From IMG/VR virus record IMGVR_UViG_3300034073_003542, positions 62,001 through 126,000 of that record: a stretch of 64,000 bases of DNA. One strand, 5' to 3'. The notes below the pieces were generated by a model that was not told the DNA's origin, made no database searches, and saw only the letters and a program-made list of their open reading frames with translations. This document shows, piece by piece, positions 1 to 61,920 of the stretch. The first letter of the stretch is position 1; each line of letters starts with the position of its first letter. The position numbers were made by a program, and so were the translations under genes.

Positions 1-629
1 CATTAGTAAGATCAACTTGAATAGGAAGATTGTCCTTATCAATTAGCTGGGCCTCAAGAAATAGCTGACTACCGAAAATCGTCTTGAGATATTCAACGTG
101 TTTCACGCCTAGCTCTAACCAGTTTTCTCGCAATCGCCCATAGTCTTCAACAATTTCATCTGCTAAACTTGATCCTAAATGACCAGTTATACCTATTAGA
201 TTTCCACTATTCAATTTCTTAATGGACTCAAAATCTAGTCTTGGTTTATAATAGAAATTTTCAGGTAAATTACTTGTGGAAACAATTTTAATCAGATCTT
301 TCCATCCTTGTAGGTTTTTGCATAAAACTAAGAAGTGAGACAAACTTTTATTTGATTCATCTTGAATTGTTGGATCATTTTTACATATATATAACTCGCA
401 ACCCAAAATAGGTTTGATTTTTGCTGCTTTTAAGCTCTTATAGAATTTTACAACGCCCGCTATGGAGCCGTGGTCGGTAATAGCACAAGCTGTTGCTCCG
501 ATAGCTTTGCATCTTTGAGCAATTTTGTCTGTTTTGCTGAGTCCGTCAAGCAAAGAAAAATGCGATTTACGAATGGACGTGTAGCGGCACATACCTGGCC
601 GACACGTCCAAAATTTTCTCCTCTGTCAT
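1..629 (-). CDS. dnaE: DNA polymerase III alpha subunit, N-terminal PHP domain (runs off window edge); frame interrupted by a 7-nt gap at 563-569
   Basis: Manual translation, not in ORF track: ATG at 629 gives MTEEKILDVSARYVPLHVHS-stop(TAA 567-569). The +1 frame continues SHFSLLDGLSKTDKIAQRCKAIGATACAITDHGSIAGVVKFYK...KPILGCELY...HFLVLCKNLQGWKDLIKIVS...FYYKPRLDF...GITGHLGS, hallmark DnaE PHP motifs. Confidence 0.92.
574..610 (-). other. GC-rich RNA hairpin immediately 5' of the dnaE coding gap
   Basis: Perfect 9-bp inverted repeat TGGACGTGT (574-582)/ACACGTCCA (602-610) enclosing a 4-bp stem CGGC (585-588)/GCCG (598-601), a 2-nt bulge and a 9-nt loop. Confidence 0.75.
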
Positions 630-631
630 AA

Positions 632-1678
632 TTATTCTATTGTTCCTGGAGCCTTATAATGAGCAACACTATAGTCTTTTGGTTGATATTTCTTGATGGT
701 ATCATTCATACCCATTAGATTAATATCGTGTCTGATTTGTTCACACATAGTCATTGGTGATCCGTTCTCGCATACTTGACCGTCGCGGTACTCTATAATA
801 GGCAGAATTGTGGGATGTCCAACAAACGTGTTTTTACCGAAATAGCAAAACTTCTTACATCTCCACGATTTAGAAAGTTTTGGTTTCTTGCATCTTTTAA
901 TTGCCTCAAATTTAACACGAAGCATTTCTTCGGTTTCGGCCAAATCATCCTTGCTAAAACACACAGAAAAAGGTCCGCCATCATTAATAAAATTGATAGT
1001 CACAATAATATGTTCATATTGAGGATACATTTTACTAATAGCATAATGATATATTCTTAATTGAGGGTCTTTGTAGAGTTTGGCTAAGGTTTTTTCTTCT
1101 CCTGTCGCCCAATCTTTTCTTCTTCCTGTTTTTAAATCGATAATTTCTAATGTATCTTTATTTTCCTGTACTATAAGGTCTATTGTTCCTTTGATTCCTA
1201 ATTTTCCCCTAATTTTTCCTTCAGGTAAATCGTACTCATAATTCGCCCATTCTTTATCAATAATGATATCAAAATGTCCCTCACTACTAAAGATGTTTCT
1301 GTTGCGTGGATCAAACATCCCATTGTGTGATGTGAGCATCGTATTGACCCATTTGAGGCATTCTTTTAAATCTTTGGGTGTCCAGACAAGGTTTTTAGAT
1401 GCGGCCGTGTAATGATCGTATATGGATTTGGTCAATTTTTCGACATTATACTTTTTAATATCAATCTTGCCAATCATATCATCTGTATAAGATTTTGTAC
1501 CATTTTGTTCACATAATTTAATTTCGGCCAAAATTTCCATAACCTTATGGCAAATACTACCTTTATCTGCTGCTTTTCCTGATGGGCTTTTAATACCAAT
1601 ATTATATTCAAGAAAATAGGCGTGTTCACAGAGGCTATGTGTGTTATATGATGAACTTCTGAGATATGTTATTATCAT
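632..1678 (-). CDS. PD-(D/E)XK exonuclease, Cas4/AddB/RecB-like, probably Fe-S binding
   Basis: GTIDLI...IIDLKTG nuclease motif, QLRIYHYA motif, N-terminal Cys (SLCE) plus C-terminal CxxxC...C cluster. Confidence 0.8.
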   Translation of the reverse strand: MIITYLRSSSYNTHSLCEHAYFLEYNIGIKSPSGKAADKGSICHKVMEILAEIKLCEQNGTKSYTDDMIGKIDIKKYNVEKLTKSIYDHYTAASKNLVWTPKDLKECLKWVNTMLTSHNGMFDPRNRNIFSSEGHFDIIIDKEWANYEYDLPEGKIRGKLGIKGTIDLIVQENKDTLEIIDLKTGRRKDWATGEEKTLAKLYKDPQLRIYHYAISKMYPQYEHIIVTINFINDGGPFSVCFSKDDLAETEEMLRVKFEAIKRCKKPKLSKSWRCKKFCYFGKNTFVGHPTILPIIEYRDGQVCENGSPMTMCEQIRHDINLMGMNDTIKKYQPKDYSVAHYKAPGTIE

Positions 1679-2319
1679 AATTTTCCTTGTAAAAATTTTC
1701 TTATCATATTATTCCGGTCTTCAATACTTAGCTCACCAGGAATAATACAATCAAATATAGATTGATCACATTGATCTGGATCTAAACCTCTTTCGCTCAT
1801 AGCCTGGGAATTAAAAGGATTTCTTTCCAATTTTATAATGATTCCTCCGCGATTCTTGACGGCAGCGCCCTCATTAGCACCAAACCTTAAATCGTTTATC
1901 AAGGCAATAGCTGGTCGGTCTTTATCTATAAGTTTTAGCGTAGCATCAACCCAAACATCTTCATACATACGCCTAAAAATGCCCGTACCAACAAATTCCA
2001 TAACCTCACGAGCGGTCATAAATCTTTGAGCTTCGATATGATTTTTAACAGGCCATGGATATTGATCAGTCCCCCAGCCAGGCATATCAACCCATTTTAA
2101 TTTAGTGGGAGTATTTTTATCTTCATCAGAACCATAACATTGTTTATATGTTAATCCTAAGATATTGATACAGACATCTCGTTTTAGAGGATCAGCAAAG
2201 CTGTAAATTTTAACATTACCAAGAATGAATTTATCTAAATACAGTCTCTCAACAAACTCTGCACTAGTAGATTTCCCACTTTGTTTTTTGCCCGCAAAGG
2301 CTATGATTTTAGTCATCAA
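1675..2319 (-). CDS. Deoxynucleoside monophosphate kinase (phage dNMP kinase)
   Basis: N-terminal P-loop GKKQSGKST, SFADPLK, REVMEFVGT, DLRF motifs of T4 gp1-like kinases. Confidence 0.85.
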   Translation of the reverse strand: MMTKIIAFAGKKQSGKSTSAEFVERLYLDKFILGNVKIYSFADPLKRDVCINILGLTYKQCYGSDEDKNTPTKLKWVDMPGWGTDQYPWPVKNHIEAQRFMTAREVMEFVGTGIFRRMYEDVWVDATLKLIDKDRPAIALINDLRFGANEGAAVKNRGGIIIKLERNPFNSQAMSERGLDPDQCDQSIFDCIIPGELSIEDRNNMIRKFLQGKL

Positions 2320-2338
2320 ACATATCTCCGTTTAGTTA

Positions 2339-2392
2339 TCAATCATCCATCATAAGTAAAAATAACACAAATAGTATTACAAATATTGGCAT
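2339..2392 (-). CDS. Possible 17-aa hydrophobic micropeptide MPIFVILFVLFLLMMDD
   Basis: Fills the primase-kinase gap exactly, starting 5 nt after the primase stop; no homology evidence. Confidence 0.3.
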   Translation of the reverse strand: MPIFVILFVLFLLMMDD

Positions 2393-2396
2393 AGTT

Positions 2397-3554
2397 TTAT
2401 AACCTCAGTTTTTGTATAGCTTCTTTAATTTCAATCTCAATTTCTTCCGAAGATAATTCGGCAACGTCATTTTTAGATATCTTTAATCTATATGTCTTAT
2501 AGGTATTTTGGCACTTCTTTATAATTTTTTCCGCAGCTATATCTCCAGGTCCATCATTATCGGTAAGGATGATAAGATTCATAGCGCCGCTACCATCTAA
2601 TAATATCTTTTGAAAGTCGCTCATGTTAGTTCCAAATATCGCTACTGCATTATGTATCCCGTTTTCTTCTAATTTCCATACATTACCTGGGCTTTCAACA
2701 ATGATTGCTGTAGCAGAATCTTGAATGTATTTTTTAGCGAACCACATATTATATAGGTGATTTTCTGTTTTAGATCCAAAGCTATGTTTCCATTTACTAT
2801 AAAGATATGCGTAAGCGGGATCGGGACACGCCCCTGTATGATATAATTCACACTTATCACAAACTGGTAATATAGAGCGGCCAGTACATCCAACCATATA
2901 AGAGTAACTATTATCATAAATAGGAACAACAACACGATTACTCATACTTTTGTGTTGTTCCTTACATAAACCAACATCATATTTACGCAATATTTCTGCG
3001 CTATATCCTCTATCAAGATAATATTGGGCGGGTATTTCAAGTTTCTTTATTATTTGATTTCTTGTTATTTTGCTGTCTGGTTCATCTATTGATTTCTGCA
3101 TATATCCAATCATACTAGAAAACTTTTGTTTTTCTTTGAATGTTTTGGATACCTTAATATCTTTAAGTGATTTATTTAGAAATTTCTCTATAAAGGTAAT
3201 AGTATCTTCAAAACTCACCATAGGATCGCCATTCTTGGTCCAATTTAATTGTTCGCGTGAAAGTATACCGCGAACAAAACCTATTATGGAACCCTTGAAA
3301 ATTTCGTGACAGTTATGTGTTCTACACTTCCAGTTTCCTCTATAAGTATCTCCTTCTGGATAAATGTTGATGGCGCTCTCATTGTCTCCACCATGAATGG
3401 GACACGACATAGTAATCATACGATTAGCGTATTTGTAATCGATGTGATATAAATCTAAAAACTCTTCTATTTGGTCACAAAGACTGTCACACAAGATTTT
3501 TAGCTTATACTGATCAATCAAACGGGATTTCTGGTTCATTATTGTCGTTGTCAT
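2397..3554 (-). CDS. dnaG: DNA primase (zinc finger + TOPRIM)
   Basis: CPIH...WKCRTHNC zinc-binding domain, YYLDRG, RVVVPI, TOPRIM motifs IVESPGN and LTDND; adjacent to DnaB. Confidence 0.88.
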   Translation of the reverse strand: MTTTIMNQKSRLIDQYKLKILCDSLCDQIEEFLDLYHIDYKYANRMITMSCPIHGGDNESAINIYPEGDTYRGNWKCRTHNCHEIFKGSIIGFVRGILSREQLNWTKNGDPMVSFEDTITFIEKFLNKSLKDIKVSKTFKEKQKFSSMIGYMQKSIDEPDSKITRNQIIKKLEIPAQYYLDRGYSAEILRKYDVGLCKEQHKSMSNRVVVPIYDNSYSYMVGCTGRSILPVCDKCELYHTGACPDPAYAYLYSKWKHSFGSKTENHLYNMWFAKKYIQDSATAIIVESPGNVWKLEENGIHNAVAIFGTNMSDFQKILLDGSGAMNLIILTDNDGPGDIAAEKIIKKCQNTYKTYRLKISKNDVAELSSEEIEIEIKEAIQKLRL

Positions 3555-5412
3555 CTTTTAGTTCGAAACCATCCTCTTCTTTATTATTGCCGTTCATAAT
3601 TTCTAATTTGGTTTTGCCCTCTGTAATTTTGGCACACCATCCCTTCATATGACAATTGATATAGTCATTACTGTCTAATCCTCCTCCGTGCCTACTAACA
3701 ATTGGAATTAGTTTACGATTACCATTATTAGGTCCGTCTTGTGCTAATTCTTCATCTGTTTTCTTTTTGAAGATAGAAAAATTAGAACACAACCATATGA
3801 TTCGGTCTGATCCACTAGCTGCCGACGTATCTTCCGAATTAATTCCGTCACGGTTTAGCTGCATAAAAGCTAGAATTGGAACCTGATAACGAACTGCAAA
3901 ATTATGTAAGCTGGTCATCATAAACCCAAGAACTTGATATTCTTTCATATCTTGAGAAATACCCTTACTATCCATTAATTTCAGATAGTCATAAATAATA
4001 ACACATGGTTTAGCATGGCCGTTTGCGTCGAGTCCAACTTCTTTTAGTAACCATCTACGCATAATAGCTAATTGTTCTTCGAACTCCATACCAGCTATTG
4101 TTTTGTAAAATAGTTTAGCTTGTTTCAATTCGTTAGCGGCTTCAAAAACCTTCTGTTTAATATTGGGCGATTGAGCAAATGTTCCTTTTTCGATAGAATT
4201 GATTTCTGTTTCCGTCATCATAGCCAATATTCTATATTTATGATCTTTGATGCTCATTTCAGTATCCATATTCAATACTGGTAGTTTATGGGTACAGGCT
4301 ATATATCGACCCATATTATCAGCCATTTGAGTTTTTCCAGTATTTTTTGTAACAACATAATTATCTGTTACATAAAGCTCGGCTTTTGTATTAACACTAA
4401 TACATTGTACTATTTTTTTGCCAATATTTTCTACTTTAGCTATCTGGTAATAAACTAGATCATTATTTATAAAGACAGGTATTTGCCAGTTTAATACATT
4501 ACTACTATACATTAATTCTTTTAGAGTAGTTTTGATTGGATGTTGTGAATTTATTTGTTTAGCTAGCCAAAAATGGTCAGAACAACATTCGGCATAGGCT
4601 CCATTAGACAATGTTATTCTATATACTTCTTTTTCGCCAAAAGGATAAACTCCTATAACTTCACACGTTGCGTTATTTTTTGACGGATCTACCAAAATAT
4701 CGCCAATCTTAACGTCACCCATTCTAATCCAACCATTTGGTGTTAAAATTTTAGCATCAAGAGGTTGCGCTTTTGGCCTCGCCCCAATAACATTGACTGT
4801 TCCTTTTCTTAATCCACCCCCAATAGATTGATCAAAAATAGGAAATCCTGTTGGAATGCCTACTTGGTCTACTGGATTATCTATTAGGTCTTGTAGAAAA
4901 CTATCTATATCTTTACTAATTTCTTCTGGATGATTTTCTGTGTCATTTAATAGAGAAGAGAAATCAAAAATTGCATCTTCTGCAATACCCAAAATATTCG
5001 TTACTGTTTCATTTCCCGTAATATCTAGCAGCTTATCTCCTGCTGTTTCAAGCTGTGTTCTAAGAAGACGCGCTATTTCTAGTTTACGTATTTTTGCAGC
5101 AAACCTTCTAACATTATCTATTGCTACTGGAAACTCCAAAATAGCTTTTAAATGCAGAGCTTCTTCTTTTTTTTCTATTTGTTGGGTTAGAGTTAAATCT
5201 TGGGCGGCGCTATAAATACTCGCCAAATCAATCTTAGAGAACTTATTGTTGTGTTCACAAATATGTTTAAGAATCTTGTATATTACTACATTACTATCAA
5301 CAGTAAAAGTAGAGGGTTGTATAATATCTGCGACATCTAAGTACGCATCTTCTCCATAACGACAAATTCCAGCCAATACCGCTCGTTCTGCCGCAGGATC
5401 GCATAATATCAT
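3514..5412 (-). CDS. dnaB: Replicative DNA helicase with mini-intein
   Basis: AERAVLAG N-terminus, GIPTGFPIFDQSIGGGL, Walker A GARPK|TGKT split by an intein, MDTEMS, IIYDYLKLM, FMQLNR. Confidence 0.93.
   Translation of the reverse strand: MILCDPAAERAVLAGICRYGEDAYLDVADIIQPSTFTVDSNVVIYKILKHICEHNNKFSKIDLASIYSAAQDLTLTQQIEKKEEALHLKAILEFPVAIDNVRRFAAKIRKLEIARLLRTQLETAGDKLLDITGNETVTNILGIAEDAIFDFSSLLNDTENHPEEISKDIDSFLQDLIDNPVDQVGIPTGFPIFDQSIGGGLRKGTVNVIGARPKAQPLDAKILTPNGWIRMGDVKIGDILVDPSKNNATCEVIGVYPFGEKEVYRITLSNGAYAECCSDHFWLAKQINSQHPIKTTLKELMYSSNVLNWQIPVFINNDLVYYQIAKVENIGKKIVQCISVNTKAELYVTDNYVVTKNTGKTQMADNMGRYIACTHKLPVLNMDTEMSIKDHKYRILAMMTETEINSIEKGTFAQSPNIKQKVFEAANELKQAKLFYKTIAGMEFEEQLAIMRRWLLKEVGLDANGHAKPCVIIYDYLKLMDSKGISQDMKEYQVLGFMMTSLHNFAVRYQVPILAFMQLNRDGINSEDTSAASGSDRIIWLCSNFSIFKKKTDEELAQDGPNNGNRKLIPIVSRHGGGLDSNDYINCHMKGWCAKITEGKTKLEIMNGNNKEEDGFELKDDNDNNEPEIPFD
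4342..4770 (-). mobile_element. 143-aa mini-intein in DnaB Walker A (class 3-type, Ala1, ends TKN)
   Basis: AQPLDAKILTPNG...CCSDHFW...VQCISV...YVTDNYVVTKN|T; removal restores GARPKTGKT; no endonuclease domain. Confidence 0.9.
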
Positions 5413-5432
5413 TAAACATCAACCTCCTTTTA

Positions 5433-5846
5433 TTAGCCCGGATTCATAGCACAACCATTACATTTATATCGAGCTTTATCGAACACAAAATCAGAAGAAA
5501 CTTTTTCTTTATCTCCGCATACCCTGCACCTCACCTCTATCATATTGGCTTTTCGGCTTCTTGGCGAAGGAGGAAGTTTGTTTAGTTTCTTATCAATAGC
5601 CACATCGCTCTTAAACATACTTTTTTCGCTCATTGTGTCGAACAAATTTGTCGATGTTTTTCTGGCGCGACTTGGCTCAGTTTTTGATTTTGGTGTCGAT
5701 ACTTTTTTAGTTTTGGTCTTTGGGCGACCCCGTTTTTGTGTTGATGATGTCGAAGTATCAACCTCTTCATCGTCTACTTCTTCTGTTGTTAATCCTTTTT
5801 GGAGAATAGCTATTAGCTGTTTAATATCATCATTATCAAGTGGCAT
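5433..5846 (-). CDS. Hypothetical protein with C-terminal Cys4 zinc ribbon
   Basis: CRVC...YKCNGC; acidic and basic low-complexity N-terminus. Confidence 0.6.
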   Translation of the reverse strand: MPLDNDDIKQLIAILQKGLTTEEVDDEEVDTSTSSTQKRGRPKTKTKKVSTPKSKTEPSRARKTSTNLFDTMSEKSMFKSDVAIDKKLNKLPPSPRSRKANMIEVRCRVCGDKEKVSSDFVFDKARYKCNGCAMNPG

Positions 5847-6327
5847 TTTTCACCTTATTTCTTTGTATAGCTAATAGTATATCAGATAGGCTCTTAGTAC
5901 TATTTGCTAGGTAACTTAATCTGTCAGAACGTTGTTTTGCGAATAGTTTAATTTTTTGTAGGGCTTGAGCGCTATCGTTGTGTTTTATTGCTTGTATGCT
6001 TTTTTCTATATAGCCATAACCTTTGTAGTTATTAATATCGTCAGCAATCACTTCCTTAACTTTCTCTTCTGCCCAATTTAGTCTTGCTAATTCTCTATTG
6101 ATTGTTCTTTGTAGATGAAAAGAGTATTGGGCTAGACGATAGCTTATTTGGGCACAATCTTCTGGCCCTAATTTTTCTAGGGCATTTCTATCCATTGTTA
6201 AATATGTATTAAGTTCTTCTTCTGGAAGTATAGTGGGAGCATATTTTGGTAATCCTATACTTTGTTCGTATTCATCAAGGATTTTATCCCAACTTTGAAT
6301 TTGATCTTTTGCAGTTTGATTACTCAT
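5836..6327 (-). CDS. Hypothetical helical/coiled-coil protein in recombination operon
   Basis: Long amphipathic helices; translationally coupled to neighbours. Confidence 0.55.
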   Translation of the reverse strand: MSNQTAKDQIQSWDKILDEYEQSIGLPKYAPTILPEEELNTYLTMDRNALEKLGPEDCAQISYRLAQYSFHLQRTINRELARLNWAEEKVKEVIADDINNYKGYGYIEKSIQAIKHNDSAQALQKIKLFAKQRSDRLSYLANSTKSLSDILLAIQRNKVKNAT

Positions 6328-6721
6328 TAAGTAACGCTCCCCAATTTTCTATTTGATTGTAAGGAAAGACTATATATTTAATTCCATTAATTTCACACCA
6401 TTCTTTTTTCTCATTATCCCTTTTTTGTCCCAATAAAAATTGCAGCTTGTTGGTATGGAAAAATGGACAAAACTCATAATGTTGTTCTCCATGAACTTCT
6501 ACACATAATTTTTTAAGAGGCAAATAAAAGTCCAGATAAAGAGTTTCATTGCGACGTAAGGGAATTGGTACTTCTTCTAATAGTTGTAGGGTTGGATACG
6601 TGTCAACTAGTAGTTTTCTTGCCGCTAAATGATATTGGGATTTGTTTATATCATTAGCTTTAGCAAAATTGCCAGTAAGATTCCAATTATGTAACTGGTT
6701 ATCTAAATCTTTTATTCGCAT
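6320..6721 (-). CDS. Vsr/DUF559-like restriction-fold endonuclease
   Basis: LYLDFYLP...VEVHGEQHY...RDNEKKEWC motif. Confidence 0.7.
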   Translation of the reverse strand: MRIKDLDNQLHNWNLTGNFAKANDINKSQYHLAARKLLVDTYPTLQLLEEVPIPLRRNETLYLDFYLPLKKLCVEVHGEQHYEFCPFFHTNKLQFLLGQKRDNEKKEWCEINGIKYIVFPYNQIENWGALLNE

Positions 6722-8757
6722 TTAATACCCATAGTTTCCTTAACTGTTTTTAGTAAATCTAGATATACTTCTGGATGTTCTACTAGATAGTTTCTTACTT
6801 TTTCTATTCCTTGGAATTTTGGGGTATCTTTGACCGTTTTGAGCGTATACCAAGCGCCAGCCTTTGTAATTAAGCCCATATCGGCAGCTAGGTTAGCTAC
6901 GTCCGTTTGTTTATCTAGACCTTGACCGTATCTTAAATAGGCTGTAGCTGTACGATTAGGAGATCCTAGTGACGACCAAACAACTTGCCATTCAACTTCT
7001 TGACCAATTTGTTCTCCGTCAGTAGTTAGTGTCCAACCAGTAGTTTTTTTTGCTCGTAGCTTAACATCGGTCTGATATGTTATGGCCTGTCCACCCTTTT
7101 CTTTCCATTCTGATCCATAGCCAGTTGGATTACCCATTAAATGTGTAATGCCTATGACTATGTTTTTGTTGACCGGAATAACATTTCCAACCTTTCTACA
7201 GAACTTAGCTAATAGCTTTGCTCCGTCTGCTCGTTGCATTTTATCCATGTCACTGGTAATTTCAGCTTCTGTACACAGAGCGGAATAGCTGTCTACTATC
7301 AATATACAGCCAGGAACTTCATTGATAATTTTTTCTCCTATCTGGAGATATTCTTCTGCGTGTAAAATTTTCCCTTCTTGCGATCCTATGACATGGAAAC
7401 GATTTAAGTCTAGTCCAGATATACCTTCTAAGTCTCGCTTTTTAAGTCTACCTTCAATGTTTAGATAATACACTTCACGCGGTTTCTTAAGTGTTCCTTG
7501 GTATTCTGATTTTTGTGCAGTAGCGGCGAAATCTAAAGATAAACTAGTATTGTGCGTTACAATAAAATCATTTGTTAAATATAGTCCGTCTGGATTTTCG
7601 ATTTTAATACACATAGCTTCTTCGTTAGCGACCTTTTCAACTTTTGTAATTGTTCTAAATAAGTTAGGTTTGATTCTCACTTTTCCGGTCTTTTTTCTAG
7701 GAAGACTAAATAGTTTATCTAGAGTATTTCCACTAATAGTTAATCTATAGGATGGAAATTTTTTGCCATTTTTGCCAGAATAGCTAGTGAATCTTTTCTT
7801 GATTCTACACAAATAACCTAGGCTTTGTGCTAATTCTTGTACATCTTTAGCTAGCTGTTTCGATGTTGTAGAGTACTCTGTTCTATTTCTCTCCATATTA
7901 GATCCGTCTGTGTCCATTAATCCTTGCATTAATTTAAAGCGATTAGTCGTGCTAGCATATAAATATTCTTTAGGAATAAATTTGTTATGTGAATTTTTAC
8001 CAAATAAGTTTAGTGTTTTTAATTTGGCTCTAAGAGTATTTTCAAGCAAGAGTCCTCCACCAAAATTACCACTAATTGAATAGTCATATTTATCTTTACG
8101 TTTAAAAGATAAGTTATTTTCGTCACAATATTTTTGGAATTTGTCTAAAATATATTCATCTCCACTAGATATTATTATCGATTTAGTAATGCCTCCATCA
8201 CCAATCAAACATCCTAAAATATATGGATCTATTGGTAGCCTTTTTTCTTGTTTAAAATAAACAGGCTTAGTAACTGGAATCTTCCATTTCCATCTATCAG
8301 TATATTTTAATCCTTCGTCTAATATTTCTTTAAGAGTAATAGTTTTCCAATTTGTTTGTCTATTATTTTTTGATACAGTCCAGTTATGATCTAATCCACA
8401 ATAGGTTTTGGACCCATCATTAAATGTTACTCGATATATATCTTTTTTCCCTTGTGGGAATAGGCCAACAACTTTAGTGGTTTTACCATTAGGGCTGCAT
8501 ACCAAATCTCCAACTTTTAGGTTTTTTAGTTGTGTTGGTCCTTTAGGTGTGTAGATTATATCTGTTAATCTTTGTAGTTTACCTACTTTGGGCTGACCAG
8601 TTAATATAAAAAAACTGCCTTCTGGAACCCCACCATTGAGAGCAATATCAAGTCCGGGGCTAATAGGAATAATAACCTGTTTTCTATCAATAATGCTATT
8701 AGCGCTCGAAATTATATTTTCGCCAAATTCTTTACTAATATCTTCTTTAACTGCCAT
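6712..8757 (-). CDS. recA: RecA/UvsX recombinase with LAGLIDADG intein
   Basis: ISPGLDIALNGGVPEG, Walker A GQPKVGK|TS split by an intein, YLNIEGR, LIVDSYSAL, KGGQAITYQTDV, LRYGQGLD. Confidence 0.92.
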   Translation of the reverse strand: MAVKEDISKEFGENIISSANSIIDRKQVIIPISPGLDIALNGGVPEGSFFILTGQPKVGKLQRLTDIIYTPKGPTQLKNLKVGDLVCSPNGKTTKVVGLFPQGKKDIYRVTFNDGSKTYCGLDHNWTVSKNNRQTNWKTITLKEILDEGLKYTDRWKWKIPVTKPVYFKQEKRLPIDPYILGCLIGDGGITKSIIISSGDEYILDKFQKYCDENNLSFKRKDKYDYSISGNFGGGLLLENTLRAKLKTLNLFGKNSHNKFIPKEYLYASTTNRFKLMQGLMDTDGSNMERNRTEYSTTSKQLAKDVQELAQSLGYLCRIKKRFTSYSGKNGKKFPSYRLTISGNTLDKLFSLPRKKTGKVRIKPNLFRTITKVEKVANEEAMCIKIENPDGLYLTNDFIVTHNTSLSLDFAATAQKSEYQGTLKKPREVYYLNIEGRLKKRDLEGISGLDLNRFHVIGSQEGKILHAEEYLQIGEKIINEVPGCILIVDSYSALCTEAEITSDMDKMQRADGAKLLAKFCRKVGNVIPVNKNIVIGITHLMGNPTGYGSEWKEKGGQAITYQTDVKLRAKKTTGWTLTTDGEQIGQEVEWQVVWSSLGSPNRTATAYLRYGQGLDKQTDVANLAADMGLITKAGAWYTLKTVKDTPKFQGIEKVRNYLVEHPEVYLDLLKTVKETMGIKCE
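7549..8577 (-). mobile_element. 343-aa intein with LAGLIDADG homing endonuclease in RecA (class 3-type, Leu1)
   Basis: LQRLTDIIYTPKG...CGLDHNW...LGCLIGDG...LMQGLMDTDG...AMCIKI...FIVTHN|T. Confidence 0.92.
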
Positions 8758-9193
8758 TATTTTGCTCCTCTGTATCTTCGTCTAGGGATTTCAATTTAGA
8801 TAAGATATTATTAACTGTTGGAATTTTTCTATCAAACTTAATATCTTTTTTTCTTTCTAGATTCATTTTTAGTTCTTTGTTCTGTGAATCTAAAAGTTTC
8901 TGCTCTTTCTCTATAATAGCAATCAAACTGGGCGCTCGCAAAGAGTATAATCTCTGTGCTTTTGGATCTCGTAACGCTTTAACTATTGCTGCTGGATCAT
9001 ACTTTTTAACAAGCTTATTTGCTGTAGCTATTTGGTTTCTATAAAAAGCCGCCCATTCTTTAGATACCCAAAATCGATAGTGTAGATCTTTTTTATCGTA
9101 TCGAGCCTTATTTTCACAGATTATCTCTGTAATATATTGAGCAGCGGTAACGGTTTTGCCGTTACTATACTTGGAAGGATATCTATTAGACAT
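8747..9193 (-). CDS. Hypothetical protein
   Basis: 148-aa ORF coupled to recA; no recognised motif. Confidence 0.6.
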   Translation of the reverse strand: MSNRYPSKYSNGKTVTAAQYITEIICENKARYDKKDLHYRFWVSKEWAAFYRNQIATANKLVKKYDPAAIVKALRDPKAQRLYSLRAPSLIAIIEKEQKLLDSQNKELKMNLERKKDIKFDRKIPTVNNILSKLKSLDEDTEEQNNGS

Positions 9194-9196
9194 TGA

Positions 9197-9553
9197 TTAC
9201 TTTGGGCGAAAAATTGCGTCTTTGTTTCGAATACTGATAGGATTTGACTTATTCTTTTTTCTGTGTTCATCAGCTAGTTCTGTGAAACCCTTTGTTGTTA
9301 TAGTAACAGTACTATTACCGTCAGCATCTTTCTTTTCGACCAACGGAAGATTTTTCTTTCGCTTTTTGGCAACGGCGGGTTCGTTCTTGTTTTTCATTTT
9401 CTTGTTAGCTTGAGTATTAACTTCTGCTTTTTCCAAGCATTTGATTACTTGATCAACAGATAATTTAAGAGCCTCAGAAATTTCTTCTGCGTCTTTCCCT
9501 TCATTATTCATCCAGTAAATTGCATATGTTTGTGTTTTATTTAGTCTAGCCAT
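9197..9553 (-). CDS. Hypothetical basic protein with N-terminal helix-turn-helix
   Basis: GKDAEEISEALKLSVDQVIKCL resembles an HTH; Lys-rich tail. Confidence 0.55.
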   Translation of the reverse strand: MARLNKTQTYAIYWMNNEGKDAEEISEALKLSVDQVIKCLEKAEVNTQANKKMKNKNEPAVAKKRKKNLPLVEKKDADGNSTVTITTKGFTELADEHRKKNKSNPISIRNKDAIFRPK

Positions 9554-9942
9554 TAATTATTCTCCTTGTTTGCCTTGCTCAACCATGATCTATTTAGTGT
9601 TCGTAGATAATTGACATATAACTCAAAAACCTTTGGATTAACCTCAATAAAATTTGTAACCTCGTCTGTTCGTTTCAGTAATGTGTTTGATTGATTTGTT
9701 ACTAGTGGATTTGGATCAAATATATTTCTACGATCATCTACTCTAACAAAAAATCTAGTTTTTCCATTATTTGTTATTGTTTTTGCATAAACGTCTTTGT
9801 CGTTTTTAAGAGCTTTTTCTGTTTTGATGCGAGGGTTTAGTAAATCGTCTAAGAAATCGTTTTTCTTTTTGTGTCCAAAAAATTCATATTCGTTATTGTC
9901 TGATACATTCGGATCTATTTTAAAAATACATTCTTCTGCCAT
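9553..9942 (-). CDS. Hypothetical protein
   Basis: 129-aa ORF, coupled stop/start. Confidence 0.55.
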   Translation of the reverse strand: MAEECIFKIDPNVSDNNEYEFFGHKKKNDFLDDLLNPRIKTEKALKNDKDVYAKTITNNGKTRFFVRVDDRRNIFDPNPLVTNQSNTLLKRTDEVTNFIEVNPKVFELYVNYLRTLNRSWLSKANKENN

Positions 9943-9943
9943 A

Positions 9944-10324
9944 TTAAATCTTCTTTCTTGGGTTCTTTTTTCTTCTAACTTTTTGTGAATTATCAGACCA
10001 TTTAACTGTTTGGTCTGTATTCATCCTTTTCATTCCTTTTGGTAACGCTCCCTTTTGGCGATAGTCATAGTGTTTCTTTTGTAGTCTACTCTTATGGTCG
10101 TCGCTAAATCTATCTCTATTGCGATCAGCTAATTCTCCAAGAGTAAGTTGATCATCGCTTTTTTTTACACTAGTGATCTGTGTAGCAACGTCCAACATAT
10201 AGTTACGGTGCGTTTTTTTACTATTGCAATGAAGACATTTGGGCGATTCTTGATAGTCTTTTATAAAGAAAAAGAGTTCAAATTTTTCGCCGCATTTATC
10301 GCATCCATAACTATACGTTGGCAT
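9944..10324 (-). CDS. FmdB-family zinc-ribbon protein
   Basis: MPTYSYGCDKCGEKFE...SPKCLHCNS signature. Confidence 0.8.
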   Translation of the reverse strand: MPTYSYGCDKCGEKFELFFFIKDYQESPKCLHCNSKKTHRNYMLDVATQITSVKKSDDQLTLGELADRNRDRFSDDHKSRLQKKHYDYRQKGALPKGMKRMNTDQTVKWSDNSQKVRRKKNPRKKI

Positions 10325-10907: not shown

Positions 10908-10937
10908 CGTACAATTCCGAATTAACTATCGTTCCTA

Positions 10938-11684: not shown

Positions 11685-11739
11685 AGTTAGGTTCCTTTTA
11701 GGGAAGTGTGTTTATAGTAAAATCCTACCATTATATACA

Positions 11740-12162: not shown

Positions 12163-12170
12163 TCCTCCTA

Positions 12171-13829: not shown

Positions 13830-13853
13830 AAATATTTATATCCTAATTAACTT

Positions 13854-15800: not shown

Positions 15801-15830
15801 TTAAAATAGGTGTACTTTGTCTCCACAATG

Positions 15831-55836: not shown

Positions 55837-55837
55837 A

Positions 55838-56377: not shown

Positions 56378-57136
56378 TCAAATCTCCTTAATAAAACCCT
56401 TGATTGTATTCTCTCTAAAAATATCTAGATAAGGTTGCTTGCTACGATGTACTTCTTCCAAACATCTTGCCAAATGTTCTGGATTTGTGCTTCTACCTTG
56501 GGGGTTTTCATAATACAATCCCACTGGATGATTTAGTAATTCCAATTTTGCTCCACCAAATGCACACCGAAGCCAAAATTCTCCGTCTGCGGCAGAAAAA
56601 TAGCTTTCGTCAAAATATCCAAAACGGTCATGCAAACTCTTTCTCCAAAGAGGCATACAATGAGGACTATTGTGATTTAATAAATTTTCAAGAGAAAAGC
56701 TAGAAATAGGATAAACTAAATTATAGCTATTGTCCTCATATTTTTCGTTGGCTGTTCTTGAAACATAAGTGATACCATAAGCTACATCAATATGGGGTTT
56801 TCTTACTAGAAGTTTATATAGTAATTCTATTCCATGACACGGTTTACGGTCATCAACATTCCAGTTGCCTATAATGTCAGCCTGACATTGTTTAATTGCA
56901 ATATTCCATGCTGGATAAAGTCCTGGATCTTCATCTAATCGAATATATTTAACGTTTTCATACATCCTACTCCTTGGCTCGATATACTTTCTTTCATTTT
57001 CTGGAGAATTACAGTCCAAGATAACAAATTCTGTATCTTCAAACATAGTTTGCTTGAAGACATCTTCCAGATATCCCTCTATAAATTTTTCACCCTTATA
57101 GACAGAACAGAAGATAGATACTTTGTATTTTTTCAT
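56378..57136 (-). CDS. Glycosyltransferase, GT2/GT-A
   Basis: VSIFCSVY, EFVILD, GLYPAWNIAI, WNVDD, ADGEFWLR. Confidence 0.85.
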   Translation of the reverse strand: MKKYKVSIFCSVYKGEKFIEGYLEDVFKQTMFEDTEFVILDCNSPENERKYIEPRSRMYENVKYIRLDEDPGLYPAWNIAIKQCQADIIGNWNVDDRKPCHGIELLYKLLVRKPHIDVAYGITYVSRTANEKYEDNSYNLVYPISSFSLENLLNHNSPHCMPLWRKSLHDRFGYFDESYFSAADGEFWLRCAFGGAKLELLNHPVGLYYENPQGRSTNPEHLARCLEEVHRSKQPYLDIFRENTIKGFIKEI

Positions 57137-58146
57137 TATGAAAGAACCTTAGAGGCAATTAAACATCCTTTAGAAACGCTGTGTAGAGGATCTACGGCAT
57201 GAACAACTTCACTAATTTTGACAGGAAAATCTAATTCGCCCAATTTCTTTTTGAATGTATCTACATATCCGTCAGCTTTTGATGTTCCGCCCGCGATAAC
57301 TATTTTAAGTGGATCTTTGAACTTTGGCAAAGCTTTATGTCCACCTAGAGCAAAAGCTAATTGTTTAACTGTATAATCAATTAATCTTTCATAATATGTA
57401 GCAACAGCCTCTAAGATCGGATTAGGATTAGTTTCGCCCACTTTAAATCCACCGCCCTCTTTTTCGGCTTGTACAACGCTGTCTGGTTCACCAGTTGCAA
57501 CGGCACTCATACGATCAATCCAGTCGCCCGATTTTGTTGTACTAAATACAACCGTTGGTTCACCATTCAACATCACACAAACATTTGTCATTCCAGAACC
57601 ACAACTAATAGCAATACCAGTATAATCGTCATTCTCAAGTTCAGCGTAACACAGAGCTTCTGCTTCGTTGATAGCTCTGGCATCATACCCACATTCAGTT
57701 AAGATAGATTTTACAACATCTTCATGATAACCAACGTCAAAATCTTCTGTTTCTTGGTCTACTGGTTGAGCAGGAACGCAGAACACTAATTTGTCGCCTG
57801 GGTTAGCTGCTTGCCCAACAACTTCTTTGAGAATAAACGCTAGAACTCTTTTTGCATCCTTTTCTTTGGCCGACACTACTCCTCTATACATGGGGCGTTT
57901 TGCTGTGTCGTTTCGCTCAATAGCTTTTTCAATTGCGTCTTTACCAAGTATGATAAATGAGCCATCAACGTCCTTGATAAAGGTTTTTCCTGCTAAACCC
58001 TTCTCGATCATTTTTGTGGCTACAGGAGTAGTAGGCTTAATAACATAAAAAGCATCACGAAATTCTTTATATTCGACATTGCCAGCATCATTGTCTTTTG
58101 ACAAAACAATAAAACTCGTACCCACATCTAAACCAACATTTGCCAT
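57136..58146 (-). CDS. Actin-fold ATPase (ParM/MreB/MamK/FtsA superfamily), 336 aa
   Basis: Phosphate-1 VGLDVGTS, connect-1 INEAEAL, phosphate-2 ISCGSGMTN, adenosine IVIAGGTS, connect-2 DPLHSVSKG; start set at MANVG. Confidence 0.85.
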   Translation of the reverse strand: MANVGLDVGTSFIVLSKDNDAGNVEYKEFRDAFYVIKPTTPVATKMIEKGLAGKTFIKDVDGSFIILGKDAIEKAIERNDTAKRPMYRGVVSAKEKDAKRVLAFILKEVVGQAANPGDKLVFCVPAQPVDQETEDFDVGYHEDVVKSILTECGYDARAINEAEALCYAELENDDYTGIAISCGSGMTNVCVMLNGEPTVVFSTTKSGDWIDRMSAVATGEPDSVVQAEKEGGGFKVGETNPNPILEAVATYYERLIDYTVKQLAFALGGHKALPKFKDPLKIVIAGGTSKADGYVDTFKKKLGELDFPVKISEVVHAVDPLHSVSKGCLIASKVLS

Positions 58147-58165
58147 AATTTTACTCCTATTATTA

Positions 58166-58477
58166 CTATTTTTTGAGACCTTTGAGTTTGTCAACTGCCG
58201 ACGATATATTTTCGTCAGATTTTTTGGTTTCGCCCAGCGACCCATATTTTTTTTCCATGCCGTCAGTTGTGATTTTGGTCACTATTTTCTGATCTTCTAT
58301 AGATATAGTATTGGGGCGAGCTTGATTGTCAACATCCTTTTGCTTCTTAAAGAAAGATTGTGAAGGGGTTCCGAAATTTTGCTGACTATTCAATTTTCCT
58401 ATTAAATATCCCAACAATCCAATAATAATATTGGAAGATAGTACGGATGCGATAATGAGTGAATCGGTATGAGACAT
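58166..58477 (-). CDS. Single N-terminal TM protein co-transcribed with the actin-like gene
   Basis: LIIASVLSSNIIIGLLGYLIG then charged tail ending AVDKLKGLKK. Confidence 0.65.
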   Translation of the reverse strand: MSHTDSLIIASVLSSNIIIGLLGYLIGKLNSQQNFGTPSQSFFKKQKDVDNQARPNTISIEDQKIVTKITTDGMEKKYGSLGETKKSDENISSAVDKLKGLKK

Positions 58478-59681: not shown

Positions 59682-61066
59682 GATTTAGGGAAGTTTGTTG
59701 GACTTCCATCCTTTGAGTATTCTGAAAATTTAGGTCGATAATTATCTCCAAGCCAATCCATAGTCTTCGCTAAAACTCCATCATGTTCTGGACTACCATC
59801 ATACAATTCAAATTTTGAAAGGGTTCCAGAGTTGTCCAGACTACTCAATTCTTCCCATAGTTCTGTTCCTGGAAATGGTATACAATCACTTATTTGCCAA
59901 TGAACTTTATTGTTATTTTGCGCGCCTATTGCGGCTAATTCTTTCAGTGTTGCTTGATCTTTTTCCCAAGAATTATCTTTTTCTCCTGGTAGATTTTTCA
60001 TTGTAGTAAAATGAAATTCCATATTGGAAAAATGAGTAACTAAATATTTGAGGTTATCGTATGACACTTTTGTGTCCATATGCTTCTTTACGTTGTCTGA
60101 CAAAACCTGATTAAAAGTTTCTACTCCAAATCTCATGCCAACACAACCAGAGTCTACCATTATATCATAAAGCTCTGGCTTACTCGTATCTATTCTACCC
60201 ATCATTGTCCAGGGCAAACCAAGCTTTTTTAATCCGTCACACATTTCTGTGATTCGCTTTGGACCCAAATTCCAAGTATCATCATCAAAAAATATGCTCT
60301 TGAGTGAGTCTCCAAGTAATGTTCGCATTTGATTTAATTCATCTATAACAGCACTAGCTGATCTACTTCTATACTTACCATTATTAATAACATTAGGCCA
60401 TTGACAATAAGTACACTTAAATGGACATCCGCGAGAAGTACTAATAGTTAATTGTATTCTGGGCGTTCCCATAGAAGGATCGTAATAATTTGCGATATAA
60501 GATGGGCGGAGTGGTAGAAAATTATCACCATTTGGTAGAGTGTCTAGATTTGTTAAGTGTTCAAATTTATAGATAGATTTAGATTCATTTCCTTTTTGGC
60601 AAATATCTAAGGCCGGGATATCATATTCACCAATAATACAATTATCAATATAATCCAGTTTTATACATTCTTCTGCATAAACCTTCATATGAGGTCCACA
60701 AAACACATTTCTACAATTTAGTTCTTGTTTTGCCCATTGAGCGAACTCTCTATTTAGTTCATATGTTGGAGTTGAAACATCGTAAAAAACAACATCTGGT
60801 TTATACTCCAGGAACATACGCTTAGAATTATTGAGATTACTATGTCGTAATGCAACACCATCATATAATTCTACTTCAAATCCATGAGACTGAACATATT
60901 TAGCAGCATAACCCAACCAAAAAGGAAACGGAGCATACCCATGAAAGTGTGATCCTTTATTTGTCCAAGGCCAACGAGAACCAGCATTTGGTCCTGTATG
61001 AATCTCTCCATTGATTATTCTAACGTATGGTATATTTGCGAATAAAATTTTCATGATTGTATCCAT
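59678..61066 (-). CDS. B12-binding radical SAM protein
   Basis: N-terminal cobalamin-binding-like domain; SRGCPFKCTYC; FFDDDTW; SGCVGMRFGVET. Confidence 0.88.
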   Translation of the reverse strand: MDTIMKILFANIPYVRIINGEIHTGPNAGSRWPWTNKGSHFHGYAPFPFWLGYAAKYVQSHGFEVELYDGVALRHSNLNNSKRMFLEYKPDVVFYDVSTPTYELNREFAQWAKQELNCRNVFCGPHMKVYAEECIKLDYIDNCIIGEYDIPALDICQKGNESKSIYKFEHLTNLDTLPNGDNFLPLRPSYIANYYDPSMGTPRIQLTISTSRGCPFKCTYCQWPNVINNGKYRSRSASAVIDELNQMRTLLGDSLKSIFFDDDTWNLGPKRITEMCDGLKKLGLPWTMMGRIDTSKPELYDIMVDSGCVGMRFGVETFNQVLSDNVKKHMDTKVSYDNLKYLVTHFSNMEFHFTTMKNLPGEKDNSWEKDQATLKELAAIGAQNNNKVHWQISDCIPFPGTELWEELSSLDNSGTLSKFELYDGSPEHDGVLAKTMDWLGDNYRPKFSEYSKDGSPTNFPKS

Positions 61067-61920
61067 TCCTTAAAATTTGCTAGTCTGTGTTTTATAGTAT
61101 GATTTTCAATAGTTTTGTGGTAAGCTGTTTGACGAAATGGCATAGTATAGTCGGGATGCTTTAAATAGAACTCTATAGCCTTTTCGCACTCAGTCTTATT
61201 TTTTACGAATACCATACATCCATCAAAATTATCAACTAAATCTTGTGACGTATCAGAAATAATAAAACCTTGACATGCCATGATATTAAAAAGACGAAAA
61301 TTAAAAGTTCCATAATCAAGATGTTCTTTCAAATGAGCGTTGAGACAAATAATGGAACTAGTATATAACTTTCTTTCACCTTCTAATGATATCTTTCCTT
61401 TGCAACATTCGTCATTCCATGATTGTGGATTTCCATAAATAGAAAGTCCATATGGTTTTGCAGATAGGATATAGTCTTCTGTTGTTTGTTTATCTCTTAT
61501 ATTATTCCCAACAAAACAGCAGTTAATATAGAAATTGCTATCAAAATCTGGATAATAAATATCTGGATCTGTTCCGAATTGACAAACCAATCCTTCTTCC
61601 TCACATGCTTCTTGCATTTTTTTTGATGTAAAAATGTATTTATTATAGCGATGTTTGTGTTGCTGGAACATTTCTACTGTGCCGGGCCAATAAGGCTTTG
61701 GAAACACATTTTGTAGATATAGAACTTTAATGGGCGAATTTGAATTGTCTTGTAGTAGAGGGCTAAAAGATATGGAAATGTCGTGATCGCCAGGAGCGTT
61801 AAGGGTCGCCCCTAATTCTTTTGCCCACATTCTTGCTAGAAGCTCGTCACCTTGGACATTGGCTCCATTATTTTGTATTGTTAAAGAAGTTGTTGATGTT
61901 GATAAGATATTAATTTTCAT
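61051..61920 (-). CDS. CgeB-like / glycosyltransferase family 1-2 protein
   Basis: FVGN, IYGNP, YTSSIICLNAH, NFRLFNIMACQGFIISD, HTIKHR. Confidence 0.8.
   Translation of the reverse strand: MKINILSTSTTSLTIQNNGANVQGDELLARMWAKELGATLNAPGDHDISISFSPLLQDNSNSPIKVLYLQNVFPKPYWPGTVEMFQQHKHRYNKYIFTSKKMQEACEEEGLVCQFGTDPDIYYPDFDSNFYINCCFVGNNIRDKQTTEDYILSAKPYGLSIYGNPQSWNDECCKGKISLEGERKLYTSSIICLNAHLKEHLDYGTFNFRLFNIMACQGFIISDTSQDLVDNFDGCMVFVKNKTECEKAIEFYLKHPDYTMPFRQTAYHKTIENHTIKHRLANFKEWIQS

What the first reader, a model, noticed from the sequence alone, without database searches (positions are those of the whole stretch)
134..61811. Hexamer GGGCGA/TCGCCC heavily over-represented in core genes, scarce in adhesin islands
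Seen: a manual scan logged 52 copies (36 TCGCCC, 16 GGGCGA on +; e.g. 134, 1105, 1243, 4165, 11765, 11838, 11909, 11982, 15261, 31331, 31361, 37229, 37298, 53568, 53694, 57236, 57434, 57524, 58230, 58314), often extended as TTCGCCCAA. A rough base-composition expectation at about 33% GC is only 5-6. Copies occur in both orientations and different frames, so one dipeptide does not explain them. Only 2 lie in 16.5-28.5 kb and none in 33.4-36.4 or 37.7-41.8 kb. Inference: a lineage-specific DNA signal (Chi-like recombination site for the phage RecA/nuclease, HIP1-like methylation-linked motif, or binding site for packaging/segregation proteins), with motif-poor islands being recent acquisitions. 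The manual count may be off by a few.
Basis: partly seen in the sequence, partly recalled or inferred. Interest (0 to 1): 0.72.

Follow-up and report, generated by a model that had tools for sequence, protein, structure and literature searches.

The report
Phage-specific over-represented DNA word GGGCG
One uncultured 210-kb phage has peppered its AT-rich genome, on both strands and in every reading frame, with the short word GGGCG (usually TGGGCGA) by choosing otherwise disfavoured codons, which points to a selected DNA signal of still unknown reader, most plausibly a Chi-like one.

Summary
GGGCGA/TCGCCC occurs 53 times in the window (about 9 expected) and 154 times in the 209,847-bp phage genome (23 expected). 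The true core is GGGCG (306 vs 73), usually extended to T-GGGCG-A (96 vs 7.6).

The excess survives synonymous-codon and whole-codon shuffles (3-8x, z 13-26). It is present in all six frame/orientation classes and in intergenic DNA. It has no strand polarity, and no other G/C-only pentamer shares it.

It is specific to this phage. About 1.2 Mb of homologous regions from 92 related phage loci sit at 1.06x, and two complete relatives show none. One distant collinear relative (L148) shows about 3x. At sites where 79 orthologues encode identical amino acids, only this phage spells the word, and it does so with rare codons.

The 'motif-poor islands = recent acquisitions' idea is not supported. The core is enriched there too, and those genes have native third-position GC. 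No DNA methyltransferase, Vsr or DpdA was found and HIP1 is absent.

The function is unproven. My best guess (about 0.35) is a Chi-like word that tames a helicase-nuclease, as in phage P1. Rivals are priming sites, another DNA-binding reader, or a repair bias.

The parts
134..61811. Field of dispersed copies of the word: 107 GGGCG (34 on +, 73 on -), of which 53 are GGGCGA and 31 are TGGGCGA.
   Evidence: enrichment against nulls
11740..12183 (-). dUTPase gene, the densest single gene in the window: five GGGCG, four of them GGGCGA at 11765(-), 11838(+), 11909(-), 11982(+), alternating in orientation about 72 bp apart. Its two orthologues have none.
   Evidence: (5 vs 1.0 expected, p=0.004)
57136..58245 (-). 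Conserved 369-aa sugar-metabolism-type gene with 7 copies. At invariant S-G-D, A-G-G and R-P positions, 0, 1 and 11 of 79 orthologues carry the word. One further site arises by Ile>Val.
632..16491 (-). Replication/recombination/nucleotide module (exonuclease, dNMP kinase, primase, DnaB, HNH, RecA/UvsX-like, HNH, PhoH, dUTPase, RNR large and small subunits). It is the most word-rich part of the window (27 GGGCG, 5.2x the codon-aware null) and is collinear with L148.
2397..3554 (-). DnaG-type primase, a candidate reader under the priming-site rival.
6712..8757 (-). RecA/UvsX-like recombinase with an intein-like insertion. This is the phage's own recombination function, relevant to the Chi-like reading.
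10311..10907 (-). HNH endonuclease, one of two Pfam HNH matches in the genome. It is a possible sequence-specific nuclease with no demonstrated link to the word.
25085..28528 (-). Tail-fibre gene (1147 aa) with no GGGCG at all: 6.3 expected from scaled composition, 2.0 from the codon-aware null. GC3 is 0.23, which is native.
39307..41742 (-). Repeat-rich 811-aa structural-block gene with 2 GGGCG (10.5 expected from scaled composition, 5.3 codon-aware). GC3 is 0.28. It is GC-rich because of its amino-acid content.

Best explanation
Shown (about 0.95): GGGCG, preferentially T-GGGCG-A in AT-rich flanks, is a DNA-level word that this one phage lineage has accumulated about 3-4x over any codon-aware expectation (13-21x over composition for the 7-8-mer). 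It lies on both strands, in all frames and in non-coding DNA. It arose mostly by synonymous or conservative substitutions that use disfavoured G/C-rich codons in a 35%-GC genome. Such gains run against both codon preference and the AT-rich composition, so they imply positive selection or a molecular drive for the word itself.

Inferred (about 0.35, the confidence given for this field): the word works like Chi. It would be read on DNA being unwound from a double-strand end by a helicase-nuclease (host RecBCD/AddAB-type, or a phage analogue), switching it from degradation to RecA-type loading. That would protect the phage's linear or replicating DNA and feed recombination-dependent replication.

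If the host is GC-rich, as the Planctomycetota lead suggests, a G/C-only word would be frequent by chance in the host and rare by chance in an AT-rich phage. Selection would then have to build it up, here to about 1 TGGGCGA per 2.2 kb, the density of Chi in phages P1 and LLS. Presence on both strands would fit a phage whose DNA ends fall at many genome positions, as in headful-packaging P1.
For: Enrichment and its DNA-level nature: synonymous shuffle: GGGCG 306 vs 94.6, z 26; TGGGCGA 96 vs 19.7; all six classes 2-8x; the only enriched G/C pentamer; intergenic: 22 vs 4.8 by composition, 7.2 by dinucleotide shuffle.

Lineage-specific gain by synonymous change: 50 vs 11 in matched orthologues; 5.3% of identical-amino-acid cells carry it; 1.06x in 1.18 Mb of homologous loci.

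Cost: the word is built from rare codons.

Chi-like features: a short, asymmetric, G-rich word, and TGGGCG and GGGCGA are the top two hexamers by excess over composition. [quoted passage not shown] P1 carries Chi on both strands, 31:19 (bioRxiv 10.1101/2021.07.08.451572), against 20:31 here for TTGGGCGA. Patchy occurrence among related phages is what a host-specific or lifestyle-specific signal would give.

Host lead to GC-rich Planctomycetota.
Against: No reader has been identified, and no RecBCD/AddAB-like or Gam-like gene was recognised among the roughly 110 proteins scanned. The phage has its own recombination kit (RecA/UvsX-like, RuvB, exonuclease), whereas Chi-rich lambdoid phages are those lacking one. 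There is no polarity (all four gene-strand by word-strand classes are 2.9-4.5x) and no clear clustering toward the ends, unlike LLS, MD8 and in part P1. The packaging mode is unknown: no terminase was found and the ends do not overlap. In two genomes of the only host lineage I could test (Pirellulales), GGGCG is not special: 0.84-0.88x composition, with TGGGCGA ranked about 700-800 of 7,800 heptamers. The host itself is unknown.
Confidence: 0.35

Rival explanations
1. Priming sites. The word is the preferred template start site of the phage's own DnaG-type primase working with its DnaB and Pol III alpha replisome. A G/C-rich start would stabilise short primers on AT-rich DNA. Selection would keep the density at the scale of Okazaki fragments on both strands.
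For: The phage encodes a primase, DnaB, Pol III alpha finger and HhH domains and an epsilon-like exonuclease. GGGCG occurs about once per 1.4 kb per strand, on both strands. T7 primase reads pentamers such as GGGTC/TGGTC and is sensitive to T/G-rich flanks (my own knowledge; the titles and abstracts of PMC2910064 and PMC6136900, listed, deal with sequence-specific template binding and flank context, but I did not read the papers). The word here has a T-rich 5' flank.
Against: I found no precedent for genome-wide enrichment of primase sites. Spacing is over-dispersed, not regular (CV 1.29, with gaps of 7.4 and 5.2 kb). L148 shares the word although its primase is only 46% identical. DnaG-type enzymes usually need only a trinucleotide.
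Confidence: 0.2
2. Binding or marking sites for another phage-encoded reader, such as a genome-structuring or condensing protein, an anti-silencing factor, or a sequence-specific nickase or modification enzyme outside the families searched.
For: Orientation-independent, roughly random dispersal over the whole genome is what a double-strand DNA-binding word would show. Most of the roughly 290 ORFs have no assigned function. There are two Pfam HNH matches, a further HNH-type PHROG hit (window 6320-6721) and several LAGLIDADG nucleases. The secondary word GAGCG (1.5x, z 7.8) suggests a degenerate GRGCG specificity typical of protein recognition.
Against: No candidate gene is linked to the word. 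ParB, DpdA/TGT and four methyltransferase families were not found. Nuclease recognition sites are normally avoided by their owner, not enriched.
Confidence: 0.15
3. A non-functional by-product of a context-dependent mutation or repair bias in this lineage, for example from its Pol III-type replicase, Ogg/HhH-type glycosylase or UvdE, or from short-patch repair that favours the word.
For: The word is strand-symmetric and present in coding and non-coding DNA alike, with near-exponential spacing. The phage has an unusual repair set: UvdE, an Ogg-HhH glycosylase, ligase and RuvB. A lineage-specific enzyme would explain the patchy distribution.
Against: No precursor word is depleted enough. The gain is about +210 copies, whereas the only low neighbour, AGGCG, is down by about 32, and the deamination-type neighbours GGGTG (1.19) and GGGCA (0.95) are not depleted. 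No Vsr was found. The bias would have to drive G/C gains at several positions at once in a genome that is otherwise 65% A+T, and against codon preference.
Confidence: 0.15
4. A HIP1-like, methylation-linked word maintained by a methyltransferase together with mismatch repair.
For: Only the analogy to cyanobacterial HIP1 as a hyper-abundant short word. GGGCGAT resembles half of an extended HIP1.
Against: The word is not a palindrome. GCGATCGC is absent. A and T follow GGGCGA equally often. PF00145, PF01555, PF02086, PF02384 and Vsr were all not found; the MT-A70 search was uninformative.
Confidence: 0.05
5. An artefact of amino-acid, codon or base composition, of a repeat family, or of assembly.
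For: Sense NNG-GGC-GAN is the commonest class (59 of 154). The hexamer's excess over its own pentamers is small (1.17x under the maximal-order Markov model).
Against: All codon-, dinucleotide- and composition-aware nulls fail to explain it. Flanks show no shared sequence beyond A/T richness, so it is not a repeat element. Matched orthologues lack it. Independent assemblies from other samples are identical, and fragments occur in marine runs.
Confidence: 0.02

Closest known systems
Chi-rich phages: P1 (50 Chi, 1 per 1.9 kb) and the lambdoid LLS / Pseudomonas MD8 class (PMC12315714; bioRxiv 10.1101/2021.07.08.451572)
   Same: A short, asymmetric, G-rich word stands out as the most over-represented word of its length (by excess over composition here; by raw count in P1 and LLS). 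It sits inside genes irrespective of frame, is not explained by codon usage, and reaches about 1 per 2 kb. It is present in some phages and absent from close relatives. In P1 it lies on both strands (31:19).
   Different: The word here is GGGCG/TGGGCGA, which matches no Chi I know of. Its reader and host are unknown. There is no polarity or clear end-clustering (LLS 20:3, MD8 32:0). This phage has its own RecA-like, RuvB and exonuclease genes, whereas the LLS class lacks a Rec module and P1 depends on host RecA/RecBCD.
Bacterial AddAB-type Chi words, e.g. Bacillus subtilis AGCGG (5-mer) and Staphylococcus aureus GAAGCGG (from my own knowledge)
   Same: A 5-7 nt G/C-rich asymmetric word, and a pentamer core is sufficient.
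   Different: The sequence differs. Bacterial Chi is skewed with replication direction, and no such skew is seen here.
HIP1 (GCGATCGC) of cyanobacteria
   Same: A hyper-abundant short word spread through coding DNA, and lineage-specific.
   Different: HIP1 is palindromic and associated with methyltransferases. This word is asymmetric, no methyltransferase was found, and HIP1 itself is absent.
Primase recognition sites of T7-like phages (GGGTC/TGGTC; PMC2910064 and PMC6136900 listed, not read)
   Same: A pentamer rich in G with T/G-rich flank preference, needed on both strands, and read by a phage-encoded enzyme.
   Different: T7 sites are not known to be enriched genome-wide. The primase here is DnaG-type. 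Spacing is not regular.
Very-short-patch-repair-driven word excess (CCWGG in E. coli) and DNA uptake sequences (USS/DUS)
   Same: Words that rise in frequency through a molecular drive rather than through their coding content.
   Different: No Vsr, no depleted precursor word, and no uptake process applies to a phage.

Membership tests
Chi (RecBCD/AddAB recombination hotspot) as found enriched in phages | Short (5-8 nt), asymmetric, G-rich word that is exceptionally frequent beyond codon usage | tested here: met
   GGGCG 3.3x and TGGGCGA 4.9x over the synonymous shuffle. TGGGCG and GGGCGA are the top two hexamers by excess over composition.
Chi (RecBCD/AddAB recombination hotspot) as found enriched in phages | Recognised by the host helicase-nuclease, changing its activity | not testable with these tools
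   The host is unknown; this needs biochemistry.
Chi (RecBCD/AddAB recombination hotspot) as found enriched in phages | Orientation bias relative to packaging or replication, and clustering toward the exposed end | tested here: not met
   all strand classes 2.9-4.5x; no clear end gradient. Caveat: P1 has Chi on both strands.
Chi (RecBCD/AddAB recombination hotspot) as found enriched in phages | The same word is exceptional in the host genome | tested here: inconclusive
   Only a candidate host lineage could be tested. Two Pirellulales genomes show no special status for the word, and the true host is unknown.
Chi (RecBCD/AddAB recombination hotspot) as found enriched in phages | The phage relies on host recombination (no Rec module of its own), as in the LLS class and P1 | tested here: not met
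   RecA/UvsX-like, RuvB and exonuclease genes are present.
HIP1-like methylation-linked word | Palindromic word with a cognate DNA methyltransferase | tested here: not met
   The word is asymmetric; PF00145, PF01555, PF02086 and PF02384 were not found; GCGATCGC count is 0.
VSP-repair-driven word | Vsr-type endonuclease, and depletion of the T:G-derived neighbour words | tested here: not met
   No Vsr; GGGTG 1.19x, GGGCA 0.95x, and only AGGCG is low at 0.77x.
Primase recognition site | Phage-encoded primase, and sites on both strands at Okazaki-fragment spacing | tested here: met
   Primase found; 306 sites, or 1 per 1.4 kb per strand.
Primase recognition site | Primers start at the word | not testable with these tools
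   Needs primer mapping.
Polar chromosome-orienting words (KOPS/SRS type) | Strong strand skew that switches at origin and terminus | tested here: not met

The most novel reading that the evidence does not exclude
The word is a phage-autonomous genome identity signal. It would be read by the phage's own replication-recombination machinery (its primase, or an unrecognised phage helicase-nuclease or DNA-binding protein) and would have been built de novo in one lineage of large aquatic phages. That would be a self-made 'Chi or priming code' which distinguishes phage DNA functionally without base modification, and whose specificity can appear and vanish between related phages (strong here, about 3x in L148, absent in complete relatives).
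Probability: 0.2. Interest if true: 0.8.

Novelty: new variant of a known kind. Interest (0 to 1): 0.55.

Why it matters
Exceptional short words are among the few genome features that reveal DNA transactions without any experiment: Chi, uptake sequences, KOPS and HIP1 were all first noticed this way. Here an uncultured 210-kb phage shows one of the cleanest cases. A single pentamer is built by synonymous changes against codon preference and is absent from relatives of the same GC content.

If it is Chi-like, it would give the first candidate Chi-type word for the phage's host lineage, possibly Planctomycetota, where none is known to me. It would also extend the 'phages enrich Chi' idea from temperate coliphages to large environmental phages that carry their own RecA. 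As I recall from Levy et al. 2015, which I did not read here, Chi also limits RecBCD-dependent CRISPR spacer acquisition.

If the phage's own primase or another phage protein reads the word, it would be a new kind of self-encoded genome code. Either way the word could serve as a practical marker for this phage lineage, and perhaps for phages sharing its host, in metagenomes.

Tried and rejected
1. Dipeptide or codon explanation: rejected by the synonymous and whole-codon shuffles and by the frame breakdown.

2. Repeat element: rejected, because flanks share nothing beyond A/T richness.

3. Family-wide trait: rejected. The CCACC, CCGCC and CAAGG 'top words' of some relatives vanished under the codon-aware null.

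4. HIP1 or methylation, and VSP repair: rejected. The MT-A70 search was uninformative because its control did not ring.

5. Host word in Planctomycetota: TTGGGCGA is 2-4x its reversed control in many Pirellulales. Unbiased k-mer analysis showed this to be an ordinary GGCGA-type codon effect.

6. L138 as a second case: rejected. It shows general G/C clustering with many CG-rich words, which is a different phenomenon.

7. Close sister phage for site-turnover analysis: none found. L001, L006, L007, L009 and L016 are 100% identical to the genome. One metagenome scan found nothing and the other gave at most 78% RNR identity.

8. Read laying gave only fragmentary contigs. Near-identical pieces occur in two marine runs, and divergent co-occurring relatives lack the word at 10352-10357 and 13443. 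This is too sparse for population statistics.

9. Literature string searches for the word returned only primers.

10. Terminase and packaging mode could not be determined.

11. A bulk scan of all small ORFs via a pseudo-alignment was not attempted.


Full report
WHAT THE SEQUENCE IS. The window is bases 62,001-126,000 of a single 209,847-bp contig, an IMG/VR virus record classed as linear and estimated 100% complete by CheckV. It has 35.4% GC, about 293 ORFs (240 on the minus strand) and a cluster of 25 tRNAs at 203.3-206.0 kb.

The window holds a replication, recombination and nucleotide module: exonuclease, dNMP kinase, DnaG-type primase, DnaB, RecA/UvsX-like recombinase, two HNH-type endonucleases (PHROG matches; only 10311-10907 also matches Pfam HNH), PhoH, dUTPase and both RNR subunits. 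It also holds a structural block (DUF5122 propeller, Mtd_N protein, tail fibre, virion proteins, head protease), NAMPT, and a long run of glycosyltransferase, dehydrogenase and sulfotransferase genes.

Outside the window I found Pol III alpha domains, an epsilon-like exonuclease, RuvB, ATP-dependent ligase, UvdE, an Ogg/HhH glycosylase, ThyX, thymidine kinase, RNA ligase, RtcB, LAGLIDADG nucleases and a major head protein. The phage comes from a subsurface/soil metagenome study, and near-identical fragments occur in two marine runs.

GGGCGA/TCGCCC occurs 53 times in the window, against 9.1 +/- 3.1 (maximum 18) in dinucleotide-preserving shuffles. It occurs 154 times genome-wide against 23 from composition, and TGGGCG and GGGCGA are the two most over-represented hexamers of the genome.

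The unit is not the hexamer. The core is GGGCG (306 vs 72.5). T-GGGCG-A is the favoured form (96 vs 7.6), rising to 51 vs 2.45 for TTGGGCGA and 16 vs 0.26 for TTGGGCGATT. Every NGGGCGN variant is enriched 2-5x, whereas changes inside the core abolish the excess, apart from a weaker GAGCG (1.5x). Among the 16 G/C-only pentamer pairs, only GGGCG stands out: 3.3x against at most 1.44x for the others. Flanks share no sequence beyond A/T richness, so each copy is an isolated G/C island and not part of a repeat.

IT IS A DNA-LEVEL SIGNAL. Shuffling synonymous codons within each gene keeps every protein and each gene's codon usage. It still leaves GGGCG at 306 vs 94.6 (z 26), GGGCGA at 154 vs 40 and TGGGCGA at 96 vs 19.7. 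Permuting whole codons gives the same answer.

All three sense and all three antisense frames are enriched: 2-8x for the pentamer and 3-17x for the heptamer. Overall the sense orientation is at 3.9x and the antisense at 4.2x. Non-coding DNA without tRNAs has 22 copies in 15.3 kb, against 4.8 from composition and 7.2 +/- 2.6 from dinucleotide shuffles.

There is no polarity in absolute strand terms: all four gene-strand by word-strand classes are 2.9-4.5x. Spacing is near-exponential with mild clumping (CV 1.29). No neighbouring word is depleted enough to be a precursor. The word is spelt with this phage's rare codons (GGC 15%, GGG 9%, GCG 10%, CGA 11%, CGC 8%, CCC 10% of their families), so each copy carries a translational cost.

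IT IS SPECIFIC TO THIS PHAGE AND WAS GAINED HERE. About 85 loci from related large phages of the same GC have a median observed/expected of about 1.1. None has any pentamer above 2.6x under the codon-aware null, whereas CGCCC is the top word at 3.0-3.9x in every 21-kb piece of this genome.

Ninety-two loci around the homologous replication module pool to 362 observed vs 343 expected over 1.18 Mb, or 1.06x. Two complete relatives have 29 GGGCGA each, in 231 kb and 180 kb, against 22 and 18 for the reversed control. This genome has 154.

In 42 genes with orthologues (26 kb aligned), this phage has 50 copies where orthologues average 11. Where an orthologue encodes identical amino acids at a site, it carries the word only 5.3% of the time. 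In the gene at 57136-58245, the invariant S-G-D, A-G-G and R-P positions carry the word in 0, 1 and 11 of 79 orthologues.

One exception is informative. L148, a 13.4-kb lake-metagenome contig collinear with window 632-16491 (31-82% amino-acid identity), has 14 copies against 4.1-4.8 expected, dispersed on both strands. So the word is patchy within the clade.

THE ISLANDS. Only the hexamer in island 1 is marginally low.

Against scaled composition, four large genes are poor: the major head protein, its 854-aa neighbour, the tail fibre gene 25085-28528 and the repeat protein 39307-41742. With 293 genes tested this is weak evidence. Their third-position GC is native, and their extra GC lies in codon positions 1 and 2.

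Recent acquisition is therefore not supported. Amino-acid content, and perhaps selection against rare codons in highly expressed late genes (an inference), explain the gaps better.

WHAT IT IS NOT. HIP1 is absent. No C5, N4/N6, Dam-type or N6_Mtase methyltransferase, no Vsr, no DpdA/TGT and no ParB was found.

A host lead emerged. A pilin-like N_methyl/DUF1559 gene (genome 129580-130776) is 75-83% identical to genes on 64-70% GC contigs of three Planctomycetota MAGs. Most of the phage's tRNAs read A/U-ending codons. However, the word is unremarkable in two Pirellulales genomes analysed without bias, even though it exceeds its reversed control there.

MOST LIKELY MECHANISM. Gains against composition and codon preference, on both strands and in non-coding DNA, imply selection or drive for the word itself.

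The only documented precedent for such a phage-specific word is Chi. [quoted passage not shown] In headful-packaging P1 it lies on both strands, 31:19. TGGGCGA here occurs once per 2.2 kb, and TTGGGCGA splits 20:31 between strands.

I therefore favour a Chi-like word that tames a helicase-nuclease, at about 0.35. The objections are the phage's own Rec genes, the lack of polarity and end clustering, the unknown packaging mode, and the negative result in the candidate host lineage.

The rivals are: start sites for the phage's primase (0.2), sites for another phage-encoded reader (0.15), a repair or mutation bias (0.15, weakened by the missing precursor depletion), HIP1-like methylation (0.05) and artefact (0.02).

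VERDICT. This is a real, unusually clean, lineage-specific genomic word. It is of a known general kind, with a new sequence and atypical properties, and its reader remains to be found.

Noticed in passing
window 3514-5412, 6712-8757, 13854-15800; genome 54760-57627: DnaB, the RecA/UvsX-like recombinase and the RNR small subunit are much longer than usual and share matches to the same unrelated PHROGs, which suggests intein insertions. A 955-aa glycosyltransferase-like ORF outside the window matches Intein_splicing and LAGLIDADG_3.
   Followed up: partly
genome 129580-130776 (+), and the N-terminus of 189986-190264: A type IV pilin-like N_methyl/DUF1559 protein is 75-83% identical to genes on 64-70% GC contigs of three Planctomycetota MAGs, although the phage gene lies in roughly 33-36% GC sequence (5-kb bins; the gene's own GC was not computed). 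This is a host lead and a case of a strongly conserved host-type gene in a phage.
   Followed up: partly
window 39307-41742: Internal diverged repeats (about 628 nt at 83% identity, 90-nt register shifts) generate the second family of over-represented words (CAACAGTAGGAGGCGG and overlaps, 13-17 copies). This is a repeat-domain structural protein with no Pfam or PHROG match.
   Followed up: partly
window 20443-21423; genome 6812-9376: An Mtd_N (major tropism determinant) domain protein and an FGE-sulfatase/C-type-lectin-fold protein are typical targets of diversity-generating retroelements. No reverse transcriptase or template repeat was searched for.
   Followed up: no
genome 203300-205998: A cluster of 24 tRNA genes (plus tRNA-Cys at 175784), mostly with anticodons for A/U-ending codons. 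It explains the GC-rich, less word-enriched right end.
   Followed up: partly
genome 19652-34960 (+): A single 5,102-aa ORF in the plus-strand virion block, not annotated here. It carries 17 GGGCG against 3.0 in the codon-aware null.
   Followed up: no
window 49387-63931; genome 42639-50256 and 126601-127844: An unusually large set of glycosyltransferases, sulfotransferases, an FkbM methyltransferase, a dehydrogenase and a mannosyltransferase. The 369-aa gene at 57136-58245 is 73-84% identical in more than 330 viral contigs.
   Followed up: no
L138 (lake metagenome contig, 17.6 kb held): A 30%-GC phage contig with general clustering of G/C: runs of 7 or more are 3.2x the codon-aware null, and GCGCGG, CGGCGG and CGGGCG are 3-5x that null (30-40x composition). 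This is a different phenomenon from the single-word excess studied here.
   Followed up: partly
genome 58197-60528 and window 2-592: Pol III alpha finger and HhH domains sit in a 545-aa ORF next to an RNase T/epsilon-like exonuclease. The replicative polymerase may be split over several ORFs. The ORF running into the window start was not annotated.
   Followed up: no
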